The translations under genes and the position numbers were made by a program. A DNA stretch of 64,000 nt, from assembly GCA_053919585.1 (NCBI GenBank), contig CM132803.1, one strand, 5' to 3'. The stretch is from Euprymna scolopes. Lineage: Eukaryota. The notes below the pieces were generated by a model. It had not been told where the DNA came from. It saw nothing but the letters and a program-made list of their open reading frames with translations, and ran no database searches. This document shows positions 56,963 to 59,900 of the stretch, one piece after another. Numbering within the stretch: the first letter of the stretch is position 1; each line of letters begins with the position of its first letter.

Positions 56963-59900
56963 TGCCCTGAAAATAAAAGAACTCTTCTTTTTCTTCCCTA
57001 CCTCGAATTACCTCCCCTGTTTCTCTCTCCTTCTGGGAGACAGTAGTAGCAGCGATGGGCCATCTTTCTTTCCCCTTGTTTTTTTGCCGGCGCTCTTTTT
57101 AGCTGAATAAAGCTTTATACAAGCTATATAAATCTTCAGTCTCTTTTCGTCATACATCTACACAACAATTGCCATTGGTTAGTATATTTTAATATATTAA
57201 ACCTTTATACAAGCTATATAAATCTTCAGTCTCATTTCGTGATACATCTACACAACAATTTATTCAGCTAAAAAGTAAAAGATGGAAAAATATCTGAAAC
57301 CAGACCGACTAGATGTGGACGCCAGTAAATCGGACGCAGCAGACACATGGCGTCACTGGGAAAAATCTTTTCACATCTTTCTTGACGCGGTCGGCGAAAT
57401 GCAGCAGACTCCTCTAACAGACAGACAAAAACTACGTTTACTAATTAACCTTGTCTCTACAACTATATTCAAATATATATCGGACATGGACAATTACAAC
57501 ACTGCTATGGATACTCTCGAAGCTGTGTTCGTGCAGCCTAAAAATACTATATTCTGCAGACATTTACTGGCTACTCGTCGTCAATAAACGGACGAAAGTG
57601 TAGACCAATATTCACAGGCCCTTAATAAACTCGCCAAGGACTGCGAGTTCCAAGCCGTCACAGCTACTCAGGCGAGGGATAAATACATCAGAGACGCCTT
57701 CATCAATGGAATTTCTTCCAATCATATACGACAGAAACTCCAGGAGAACAAGAAGCTGGATTAAAGCACGGCGTATGACCAGGCTTTAACCCTTGAAATG
57801 GCGCAAAAGCAATTAGCCTCTTACTCCCTACAGAACTCTCTGAATGCATCTACCTCCACTGTCCGGACCGAAGTTACAGAGAGTGATGACCAGTATGAGT
57901 GTGGTGCTGCCTCGGGACAAAAATGCTTCTTCTGTGGGAACCCAAGACACAATAGATTTAGGTGCCCTGCCCGAAGCTCCGTTTGCAAGAATTGCGACAA
58001 GAAAGGACATTTTGCTTGTGTCTGCCGATCTCCTACAGCAGCCGCTATAAATCACGGTGAGTCGATTCTTGCTTCTATTCCATCTTACAATTTTACAGAG
58101 AGTCTATCTCACTCATCGTTGTGTGGTAAAATTAAGGGCAAGTCTGTTAATATACTCATTGATACGGGAAGCTCGGAAAACTTCATTCATCCTGATAAGG
58201 TGAAAAGGCTGGGACTGTCGACCATGGCAAGTTCGAGAAAAATTTTTATGGCTAGCAGTTCGCATTCGTCCTCTACTCTTGGGCATTGCATAGTATCCCT
58301 CAATCTGGGCGGAAGAAAATATGATGATGTCAAACTAGCTGTTATGGCCCACTTATGCTGTGACGTCATCCTCGGACATAATTTCCTACGACAACACTCT
58401 TCTGTGAAAATACCTTTTGAAGGACCGCTCTCCCCCTCTTACGATTTGTGGATTGACAGCAATTAATAATATCCCTTATCCTTATCTATTTACGAACCTA
58501 ACCCCCGACTGTCGTCCAATAGCAGTAAAATCAAGGAGGCACAGCCTACCAGATGCTAAATTCATCAAATCTGAAATATCGTGCATGCTGAAGGAAGGGA
58601 TTATCGAACCCTCTCAGTCTCCATGGCGAGCTCAAACGCTTTTGATATCCCCTGATAACCACAAGAAGAGACCCGTAGTAGATTAGTTCCAGACAAACAG
58701 ATTTTACTCTTCTGGACGCTTATCCCCTACCTCGGATAGAGGACATGGTAAACAAGATTGCTGGTTATAAAGTATTTAGCACTCTGGATTAAACCAATGC
58801 GTATCACCAGGTTGCCATCAGACAGAGAAAAAAAATATACTGCATTCGAAGCTGCAGGGAGCCTCTACCAATTTTGTCGGATACCTTTTGGAGTGACCGA
58901 TGGGGTAGCTAGCTTCCAGCGAGTTATGGATGACATAATCAAGCAAGAAGACCTCAAAGGAACTTATGCCTACATTGACAATGTCACCATCTGTGGCCAA
59001 AACCAGGCAGAACATGATAACCATCTGAAGCAGTTCATGAATAGCGTGGAAAAGTACGGTTTGACTCTGAATAAAAACAAGTGCCATTATTCGCTTAGCT
59101 CTGTGAATCTGCTCGGATATACAATAGGCAGTCGTTCAGTAAGACCCGACCCCGACAGACTCAAGGGATTGGTGGACCTCCCTCTACCTCTAGACCATAC
59201 TTCTCTTCGGCGAGCTATGGGGATGTTTTCCCACTACTCCAGGTGGATCTCAAACTTTTCAGAAAAACTACATCCTTTAACTAGGGTCACCCTCTTTCCC
59301 CTCAACGAGGAACAAACGGATGCCTTCAAGCATCTGAAAAAAGAAATTGCAAAAGCATCCCTGGCAGCCATAGACTCAACTCTACCATTTAAGGTCGAAA
59401 CAGATGCTTCGGAATATGCCATCGCCACCTCGCTCACCCAAAATGGTCGTCCTGTGGCTTTCTTTTCTAGGACTTTAACGTCTGCTGAACAGAAACACTG
59501 TTCAGTTGAAAAAGAGGCCTACGCTATCGTAGAAGCCATTCAGAAGAAAATGGCGACGCCTACTACTTGGAAAGCATTTTAAACTTGTCACGGATCAAAA
59601 ATCTGTTTCGTTTATGTTCAACCCCAAAAGCAAGAGCAAAATAAAAAATGAGAAGATCACAAGATGGAAGCTAGAACTCGCCTGCTTCAGCTACGACATA
59701 ACTTATCGTCCAGGAAAACAAAATGCAGTTGTGGATGCTCTATTTCGAATTTGCTCAGCCACAATTTCTATAGAGAAACTATACGCTCTGCACAGGGATT
59801 TGTGTCACACTGGAGTAACCCGAATGGTGCACTTTGTTAGATGCAAGAATATGCCATACTCCATAGATGATGTAAGAGCGGTAACCAGATCATGCGTGGA

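What the first reader, a model, noticed from the sequence alone, without database searches (positions are those of the whole stretch)
57095..57275. Independent covarying self-complementary PBS in Gypsy family 3
Seen: TTTATTCAGCTAAAAAG (57259-57275) perfectly complements CTTTTTAGCTGAATAAA (57095-57111). The sequence differs from family 2 but geometry is identical (LTR-CA, one A, TTTATT..., ATG shortly after). This compensatory change between diverged families argues for selection on the pairing. Prediction: family 1 (LTR ...TTCTTAGTGAAATAAAGCT) should have TTTATTTCACTAAGAA after its 5' LTR.
Basis: partly seen in the sequence, partly recalled or inferred. Interest (0 to 1): 0.7.

Follow-up and report, generated by a model that had tools for sequence, protein, structure and literature searches.

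The report
Self-priming Gypsy retrotransposon primer site
A dead Gypsy-type jumping gene in this mollusc genome has no tRNA docking site; the site instead pairs perfectly with a stretch of the element's own terminal repeat that ends in the poly(A) signal, a trait shared with changed sequences by its whole animal clade, so these elements most likely prime their own reverse transcription as fission-yeast Tf1 does.

Summary
In detail: 57095-57111 and 57259-57275 are perfect 17-nt reverse complements, and the second sits where a primer-binding site belongs (LTR end CA, one A, site, ATG 7 nt later). In 32 related families, most from metagenome contigs (gag 30-44% identical), the pairing is kept with many different sequences: 94% of cells paired against 64% for shuffled partners.

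The 5' arm nearly always ends in AATAAA or ATTAAA and is followed by a small hairpin. No family has a TGG tRNA site. The best reading is Tf1-like self-priming with cleavage just after the poly(A) signal.

Rearranged genomic copies support this. Two solo LTRs carry arm+T+complement of the U5 end. A deletion ending at the arm's last base arose at least three times. The window copy has a junction 2-6 nt past the arm.

The window copy is atypical, with a 147-nt loop where 21 other copies have 57. The clade lacks a chromodomain and the Tf1 three-duplex fold, so it is not shown to be Tf1/sushi. The transcription start is unknown.

This scan already reported the same trait on other DNA of this genome.

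The parts
56958..56962 (.). Target-site duplication ATTGC, 5' copy
   Evidence: Same 5 nt follow the 3' LTR at 62370-62374
56963..57167 (+). Family 3 5' LTR (205 nt, TG...CA)
   Evidence: 97% identical to 62167-62369; matches 21 other genomic copies
57095..57111 (+). 5' arm (candidate self-primer), LTR positions 133-149, ends in AATAAA
   Evidence: Exact reverse complement of 57259-57275
57112..57124 (+). Small hairpin GCTT-TATAC-AAGC directly 3' of the arm
   Evidence: Predicted in folds of 8 families; 24 of 32 families have a stem of at least 4 bp here, against a mean of 14 (max 22) in shuffles
57168..57202 (+). Copy of the target-site duplication plus 3' host flank (compare 62370-62404) sitting inside the element
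   Evidence: Alignment; BLAST
57203..57257 (+). Second copy of LTR positions 151-205, the stretch between arm and primer site
   Evidence: 95% identical to 57113-57167; junction in CTTT microhomology 2-6 nt after the arm
57259..57275 (+). Primer-binding site, complementary to the element's own LTR
   Evidence: same site in 24 genomic copies
57282..62020 (+). Broken gag-protease-RT-RNase H-integrase region, in at least 6 ORF pieces
   Evidence: ORF list; Pfam aspartyl protease, RVT_1, RT_RNaseH
62154..62166 (+). Polypurine tract AGGCGGCGGAGAA
   Evidence: Read directly; same motif before family 1 and 2 LTRs
62167..62369 (+). Family 3 3' LTR, with an arm copy at 62297-62313
62370..62374 (.). Target-site duplication ATTGC, 3' copy
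49119..49348 (+). Family 2 5' LTR; arm at 49266-49284
   Evidence: 76 arm copies in the genome
49351..49369 (+). Family 2 primer-binding site, a 19-nt perfect complement of 49266-49284; gag ATG at 49378
   Evidence: 30 genomic junctions
546..738 (+). Family 1 3' LTR (193 nt), arm at 679-695; further copies at 7112-7304 and 37470-37662

Best explanation
Family 3 is a small Ty3/Gypsy LTR retrotransposon. Canonical copies are about 4.15 kb with 205-nt LTRs; the window copy is 5.4 kb and broken. It belongs to a chromodomain-less animal clade that does not use a tRNA primer.

Shown:
- The site directly after the 5' LTR (CA + A + 12-19 nt) is complementary to an LTR-internal segment.
- That segment ends in the poly(A) signal and is followed by a small hairpin.
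- The two sides change together across many families.

Inferred mechanism, by analogy with Tf1:
1. The genomic RNA starts upstream of the arm, so the arm lies in R.
2. The 5' region folds back onto the site.
3. The RNA is cut right after AAUAAA, between LTR 149 and 150 in family 3.
4. The new 3'-OH is extended across the spacer A and U5, giving a short minus-strand strong-stop DNA that ends at position 150.
5. That DNA jumps to the 3' R.
6. Plus-strand synthesis later copies the primer back into the site, which keeps the two sides complementary.

A likely second role (inference only): the duplex hides the poly(A) signal at the 5' end of the RNA, while the 3' copy, which has no partner, stays active.
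For: 1. Pairing is real and conserved within families. Family 3 shows it in 24 junctions, family 1 in 41 and family 2 in 30.
2. Covariation. Across 32 families, 94% of cells over the 16 innermost positions are paired, against a mean of 64% and a maximum of 71% in 1000 partner shuffles. Positions 5-12 each have 2-4 Watson-Crick pair types and almost no non-pairs. Inverted repeats averaged 12.2 nt at this place against 3.0 in control windows inside gag.
3. No TGG tRNA site is present, and three different sites occur in one genome, which excludes a shared host primer.
4. Folds give z-scores of -4.3 to -9.0 with the arm:site duplex plus an adjacent hairpin.
5. Replication-type fossils with a breakpoint at the arm's 3' end:
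- Solo LTRs with target-site duplications in family 3 (C4, L149) and family 1 (C5, L170) read LTR-up-to-arm + T + reverse complement of the last 23-34 nt of U5 + rest of LTR. That is what an arm extended on the site-bound template would read.
- In family 2, three young copies have both LTRs lacking the stretch equivalent to window 49195-49284, which ends at the arm's last base. The LTRs of two were compared directly (0 and 1 mismatches, own target-site duplications); the third shows the same deletion in both LTRs by BLAST. They are not one clade (AU p = 2e-7).
- A family 1 5' LTR lacks exactly the 14 nt CTTAGTGAAATAAA.
- The window copy has its junction 2-6 nt after the arm.
6. Self-priming is an established mechanism in Tf1, Tf2 and Tj1 (PMC10085805, PMC4600332, PMC6317226).
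Against: - The transcription start is not known. No conserved TATA box or initiator lies upstream of the arms. The only RNA data available were assembled contigs, which cross the whole LTR.
- Cleavage and priming have not been observed. All fossils could in principle arise by DNA-level template switching at the inverted repeat or by slippage at microhomology (AGCCC in family 2, TAAA/CTTT in family 3), followed by LTR-LTR recombination.
- A family 2 subfamily of about 10 copies keeps a mismatch at site position 13, and family 1 keeps a bulge. The site is therefore not always rewritten from a full-length primer.
- The Tf1 three-duplex structure is not evident.
Confidence: 0.77

Rival explanations
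1. The duplex is a regulatory RNA structure only. It could mask the 5' poly(A) signal, or serve packaging, dimerisation or translation control, while reverse transcription is primed by something else not yet recognised.
For: The arm ends in AATAAA or ATTAAA in 19 of 32 families and in A-rich variants in the rest. The partner exists only after the 5' LTR, so masking would be specific to the 5' end. Priming has not been observed.
Against: The site sits exactly where a primer site must be (CA + 1 nt), and no other candidate site exists between the LTR and the gag ATG, a space of 0-36 nt. Two solo LTRs carry the arm covalently continued by T plus the complement of U5, which a purely regulatory hairpin does not predict.
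Confidence: 0.1
2. Priming occurs in trans or from a longer RNA. The primer would be the arm of a co-packaged partner RNA, or of the 3' U3-R copy, or a long 5' fragment (about 90 nt in family 2) rather than a short 5'-terminal oligonucleotide as in Tf1.
For: The C24 locus (L161) reads short LTR + A + reverse complement of the arm and of about 70 further upstream nt. It stops at the equivalent of window 49195, as if a plus strand had copied a 90-nt primer RNA to its end. The pairing length varies from 8 to 22 nt.
Against: This rests on a single complex locus. The family 1 deletion footprint is only 14 nt. The arm-less short-LTR copies are not a replicating lineage, so no case requires trans priming.
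Confidence: 0.1
3. The complementarity is chance or a by-product of DNA rearrangement, with no function.
For: The window copy is itself rearranged.
Against: A 17-nt exact match, with zero of 100 shuffles reaching 3 matches. It is present in all canonical copies and in 32 families with different sequences.
Confidence: 0.01

Closest known systems
Tf1, Tf2 (Schizosaccharomyces pombe) and Tj1 (S. japonicus): self-primed Ty3/Gypsy chromoviruses
   Same: The primer-binding site next to the 5' LTR is complementary to the element's own LTR/5' RNA instead of a tRNA. The proposed cut lies at the 3' edge of the duplex. An additional stem lies between primer and site (PMC10085805, PMC4600332).
   Different: Tf1 uses the first 11 nt of the mRNA and needs a three-duplex 'pretzel'. 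Here the duplex is 12-19 bp, ends in the poly(A) signal, and is flanked by one small hairpin. No chromodomain was found in two families. The hosts are animals. The transcription start is unknown.
Tf1/sushi group in vertebrates (sushi-ichi and relatives), Tcn1 clade of mosses, TAR lineage of plant Ty1/copia: predicted self-priming
   Same: Self-priming is inferred from LTR-site complementarity (PMC6317226).
   Different: Those are chromoviruses or copia elements. The present clade is a compact (about 4.1-4.4 kb) chromodomain-less Gypsy lineage with 135-235-nt LTRs. Gag relatives occur in molluscs, Lepidoptera, a prawn, Trichinella, Clytia and a stingray.
Mag lineage, C-clade (SURL-like) Gypsy elements, the most abundant Gypsy clade of molluscs
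   Same: Short LTRs (mean 174 nt in the published model), a conserved AATAAA, no conserved TATA box, and a 3' end AYANAACA like ...ACACAACA here (PMC3601003, PMC6238403).
   Different: Membership was not tested, because no reference sequences were reachable. The papers read do not discuss primer sites.
HIV-1 5' poly(A) hairpin (from general knowledge, not tested here)
   Same: A poly(A) signal in R is kept silent at the 5' end by RNA structure and context.
   Different: In HIV the hairpin is local and priming is by tRNA-Lys3. Here the masking partner would be the primer site itself.

Membership tests
Ty3/Gypsy (Metaviridae) LTR retrotransposon | Domain order gag-protease-RT-RNase H-integrase | tested here: met
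   Pfam on window pieces, family 1 copies and a 1005-aa open frame in metagenome locus L085. The best solved-structure match is Ty3 Gag-Pol, E = 1.4e-54.
Ty3/Gypsy (Metaviridae) LTR retrotransposon | TG...CA LTRs, polypurine tract, 5-bp target-site duplication | tested here: met
   LTRs at 56963-57167 and 62167-62369, tract at 62154-62166, duplication ATTGC.
tRNA-primed LTR element (conventional) | Site complementary to a tRNA 3' end (starts TGG) | tested here: not met
   The sites start TTTATT, TTTAAT or TTTAAC, differ among three families in one genome, and match the element's own LTR instead.
Self-priming LTR elements (mechanistic class founded on Tf1) | Site complementary to the element's own LTR/5' leader, kept through compensatory change | tested here: met
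   32 families; 94% of cells paired against 64% for shuffled partners.
Self-priming LTR elements (mechanistic class founded on Tf1) | Complementary segment lies at or near the 5' end of the genomic RNA | tested here: inconclusive
   Only assembled RNA contigs were available, and they span the whole LTR. No promoter motif was found.
Self-priming LTR elements (mechanistic class founded on Tf1) | Cleavage at the 3' edge of the duplex and extension from it | tested here: inconclusive
   Indirect evidence only: four kinds of rearranged copies with breakpoints at the arm's last base, give or take 3 nt.
Tf1/sushi group (chromoviruses) | Chromodomain at the integrase C-terminus | tested here: not met
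   No PF00385 hit at E <= 0.01 in the last 199 aa of a family 1 copy, nor in the 284-aa integrase C-terminal ORF of L073, which ends 14 nt before its 3' LTR.
Tf1/sushi group (chromoviruses) | Three-duplex 'pretzel' leader structure | tested here: not met
   Minimum-energy and centroid folds of 8 families show one long duplex plus one adjacent hairpin.
Tf1/sushi group (chromoviruses) | RT/integrase phylogeny inside the group | not testable with these tools
   No Tf1, sushi or other reference element sequences could be fetched.

The most novel reading that the evidence does not exclude
A widespread, chromodomain-less animal Gypsy clade evolved, or kept from a common ancestor, its own form of self-priming. 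In it the primer's 3' end is the poly(A) signal itself. One duplex would then do three jobs: it supplies the primer, sets the cleavage site right after AAUAAA, and silences the 5' poly(A) signal. The site would be rewritten from the arm in each cycle, so the pair drifts freely and each family ends up with a private primer that host tRNA-fragment defences cannot target. The genomic fossils (arm+T+complement of U5; a recurrent deletion ending at the arm) would be the first natural record of self-primed strong-stop DNA.
Probability: 0.35. Interest if true: 0.7.

Novelty: new variant of a known kind. Interest (0 to 1): 0.55.

Why it matters
Self-primed reverse transcription has been shown experimentally only for fission-yeast Tf1-type elements, and has been predicted for their chromovirus relatives and one plant copia lineage. 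Finding the same logic, with a different geometry, in a compact chromodomain-less clade would make tRNA-independent priming a common animal strategy rather than a fungal oddity. Gag relatives of the clade occur in molluscs, insects, crustaceans, nematodes, cnidarians and fish.

It also matters for annotation, because tools that require a tRNA site will miss or misjudge these elements. And it matters for host defence, because small RNAs derived from tRNA 3' ends cannot target such sites. The rearranged copies offer a sequence-only way to locate the cleavage site.

None of the papers found in the held library describes this for invertebrate Gypsy elements. This scan has already reported the trait on other pieces of the same genome.

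Tried and rejected
DNA around the named gag homologues (Pieris, Loxostege, Macrobrachium, Trichinella, Clytia, Hypanus) could therefore not be fetched, and metagenome contigs were used instead. A first attempt with a 17-sequence alignment was too diverse.
- RNA evidence: all runs offered were Logan contigs. Family 1 sequence is present in oligo-dT/poly(A) libraries of two studies, but the contigs run through the whole LTR, and no starts, ends or poly(A) tails were reported. This gives no conclusion on the transcription start or poly(A) site. One contig begins at the arm's last base, but contigs cannot show RNA ends, so I make no claim from it.
- Promoter motif search upstream of the arms found no conserved TATA box or initiator.
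- Rfam had no match in 56800-57500.
- I first read the window's 147-nt loop as the family geometry. I rejected this after seeing 21 canonical copies.
- I considered that the family 2 copies with arm-less short LTRs form a replicating lineage, which would argue against self-priming in cis. The tree and AU test reject a single origin.
- I considered splicing as the cause of that deletion. The boundaries are not GT...AG.
- I could not interpret the complex family 1 locus L145 or the family 2 locus L150.
- No covariance model was built. My own pair counts were sufficient.

Full report
**Observation**

The window shows CTTTTTAGCTGAATAAA at 57095-57111 and its exact reverse complement at 57259-57275. 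A pattern search finds only these two and the 3' LTR copy at 62297-62313. None of 100 shuffles reached three matches even with three mismatches allowed.

**The element**

- BLAST of the region against the window gives LTRs at 56963-57167 and 62167-62369, 97% identical.
- The polypurine tract is at 62154-62166, and a 5-bp target-site duplication ATTGC lies at 56958-62 and 62370-74.
- Between the LTRs are at least six ORF fragments with aspartyl protease, RVT_1 and RNase H domains. This is a dead Ty3/Gypsy copy.
- The window lies in a 5.9-Gb genome. Earlier notes of this scan call it a mollusc.

**This copy is atypical**

Twenty-one other genomic copies have the 205-206-nt LTR followed directly by A plus the site, which puts 57 nt between the arms. 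In the window, 57168-57202 repeats the target-site duplication and 30 nt of the host flank found after the 3' LTR. Then 57203-57257 repeats LTR positions 151-205. The junction lies in a CTTT microhomology 2-6 nt after the arm.

**The prediction for family 1**

The window holds only 3' LTRs of family 1 (546-738 and two duplicates). Genomic 5' LTRs are followed by A + TTTATTTCACTAAAGAAC + T + ATG. Thirty-three of 41 junction hits match exactly. This is the reverse complement of the LTR segment GTTCTTAGTGAAATAAA with one extra A, giving 13 bp, a bulge, then 4 bp. The prediction holds, and no TGG site is present.

Family 2 pairs 49266-49284 with 49351-49369 over 19 nt and has 30 junctions in the genome. 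All three gag proteins start MEKYLKP, so the families are relatives.

**Wider clade**

- The family 2 gag finds homologues named from Pieris, Loxostege, Macrobrachium, Trichinella, Clytia and Hypanus.
I therefore scanned metagenome contigs with a gag alignment and obtained 80 loci.
- For 61 loci with enough upstream DNA, I looked for the longest perfect inverted repeat whose 3' arm starts within 70 nt before the gag ATG. It averaged 12.2 nt, against 3.0 for control windows inside gag.
- After removing near-duplicates I kept 32 families with different arm sequences.
- Over the 16 innermost positions, 94% of cells are Watson-Crick or G-U pairs. Shuffled partners gave a mean of 64% and a maximum of 71% in 1000 shuffles. 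Positions 5-12 carry two to four pair types each with almost no non-pairs. The families are related, so shuffles overstate significance, but the many double changes do not depend on that.
- The geometry is constant: arm, loop of 21-68 nt, LTR end (A)CA + A, site, then 0-36 nt to the ATG.
- The arm ends in AATAAA (13 families), ATTAAA (6) or another A-rich hexamer.
- The arm is followed by GCC, ACC or GCT opening a small hairpin. Twenty-four of 32 families have a stem of at least 4 bp there, against a mean of 14 and a maximum of 22 in shuffles.
- Folds of eight leaders give the duplex plus this hairpin, with z-scores of -4.3 to -9.0.

**Mechanism**

A host primer is excluded, because three families in one genome have three different sites, each matching its own LTR. 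The site is where minus-strand synthesis must begin. The established precedent is Tf1, in which the first 11 nt of the mRNA pair with the site, the RNase H domain of RT cuts the RNA, and the fragment primes (PMC10085805, PMC4600332; predicted for Tf1/sushi, Tcn1 and TAR in PMC6317226). I infer the same here, with the cut right after the poly(A) signal.

**Evidence from rearranged copies**

I compared the coordinates of all LTR-site junctions and all arms in the genome and fetched the misfits.

1. *Family 3, contig C4.* A solo LTR with target-site duplication TGTTG reads LTR 1-149 + T + reverse complement of LTR 173-205 + LTR 150-205.
2. *Family 1, contig C5.* A solo LTR with duplication CTTAC reads LTR 1-150 + T + reverse complement of LTR 171-193 + LTR 157-193. 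The part after the spacer is the exact complement of the arm without the extra A of the true site, so it was copied from or as the arm. In both cases the arm's last base is continued by exactly what a primer extended on the site-bound template would make. A snap-back of strong-stop DNA that then copies its own primer explains the whole structure.
3. *Family 2.* Three full-length copies have short LTRs at both ends. The LTRs of two were compared directly: 135 and 134 nt, with 0 and 1 mismatches, and duplications GGTCA and ATACT. The third shows the same short form at both ends by BLAST. They lack the stretch equivalent to window 49195-49284, whose last base is the arm's last base. On a tree of 3.78 kb of internal sequence they are interspersed with full-LTR copies, and the AU test rejects one clade (p = 2e-7), so there were at least three origins. 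A strong-stop DNA ending at the first base after the arm and mis-annealing to AGCCC in U3 would give this product every time.
4. *Family 1.* One 5' LTR lacks exactly CTTAGTGAAATAAA, while its 3' LTR keeps it.
5. *The window copy.* It fits a strong-stop DNA that jumped onto a read-through transcript of this locus, followed by recombination with the resident copy.

Each case has a DNA-level alternative: template switching at the inverted repeat, slippage, or duplication plus LTR-LTR recombination. Those alternatives do not predict that all breakpoints fall at one position in three families.

**Open points**

- The transcription start is unknown. Contigs from RNA libraries hold family 1 but run across the LTR. 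No promoter motif is conserved.
- A C24 locus reads like a plus-strand strong-stop that copied about 90 nt of primer RNA. This would place the family 2 start near the equivalent of 49195. It is a single, complex case.
- A family 2 subfamily keeps a mismatch at site position 13 and family 1 keeps a bulge, so rewriting of the site from the primer is not complete.

**Comparison with known groups**

- The element is a Ty3/Gypsy member.
- It works like Tf1 but is not shown to belong to the Tf1/sushi group. No chromodomain was found in two families, and no three-duplex fold is evident.
- Phylogeny could not be done.
- LTR features resemble the published Mag C-clade model (PMC3601003), which is only a lead.
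- Papers found on mollusc and annelid Gypsy elements do not treat primer sites.

**Earlier findings of this scan**

Notes s1-295548, s1-275108, s1-275121 and s1-280699 describe the same trait on other DNA of this genome. My tests were run independently and agree with them.

**Verdict**

The feature is a new variant of a known mechanism, in a dead and rearranged copy.

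Noticed in passing
window 49119-55931: The family 2 copy has no 3' LTR. The 155 nt before its 5' LTR (48957-49111) match 55777-55931, and a polypurine tract precedes the 5' LTR, as if this were the remains of a tandem element-LTR-element array. Earlier notes place a Transib insertion at 50099-51990 inside it.
   Followed up: partly
window 1136-2182 (also 7682-8596, 38115-38909): ORF of a Tc1/mariner-type transposase (HTH_Tnp_Tc3_2, Sleeping Beauty HTH, DDE_3), present in three copies of a segmental repeat.
   Followed up: partly
window 12689-24612 and 23909-35816: An 11.9-kb stretch repeated in tandem at 98% identity (period about 11.2 kb). Window 1-2754 is repeated at 6590-9299 and, with an inserted stretch, at 36948-40797.
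   Followed up: no
window 39302-39891: Tandem array with a period of 87 nt (about 7 copies).
   Followed up: no
window 18719-19864; 43909-44553; 45529-46659: ORFs with a hAT dimerisation domain, a non-LTR endonuclease domain, and Ty1/copia-type gag-pre-integrase plus integrase core.
   Followed up: partly
G000 C2:162470322, C7:134241520, C9:18722176 and others (family 2): A subfamily of about 10 copies whose primer site has T instead of A at position 13, while the LTR arm is unchanged. This is a tolerated mismatch in the 19-bp duplex.
   Followed up: partly
L145 (G000 C46:62889900-62890600): A family 1 5' LTR with two successive jumps between part of the arm, the U5 end and part of the primer site. 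It is a complex template-switch product that I could not resolve.
   Followed up: partly
L150 (G000 C12:155674600-155675500): In family 2, the polypurine tract is followed by a mini-LTR (first 6 nt + last 19 nt, joined at TGGT), then A, the primer site and about 49 nt of leader, and only then the full 3' LTR.
   Followed up: no
L033/L032 (G000 C42:15232190-15235601): A pair of family 1 LTRs 3.2 kb apart. The internal part starts A+TTTATT and then continues with unrelated sequence. This may be a deletion derivative or a non-autonomous element.
   Followed up: no
arms of 32 families, positions 10-13 from the arm's 3' end: A conserved TTAG/TCAG motif lies inside the arm (G:C in 25 of 32 families at position 10, A:T in 22 of 32 at position 11). 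It resembles an initiator element and would give an 11-nt primer as in Tf1, but pairing usually continues further.
   Followed up: partly
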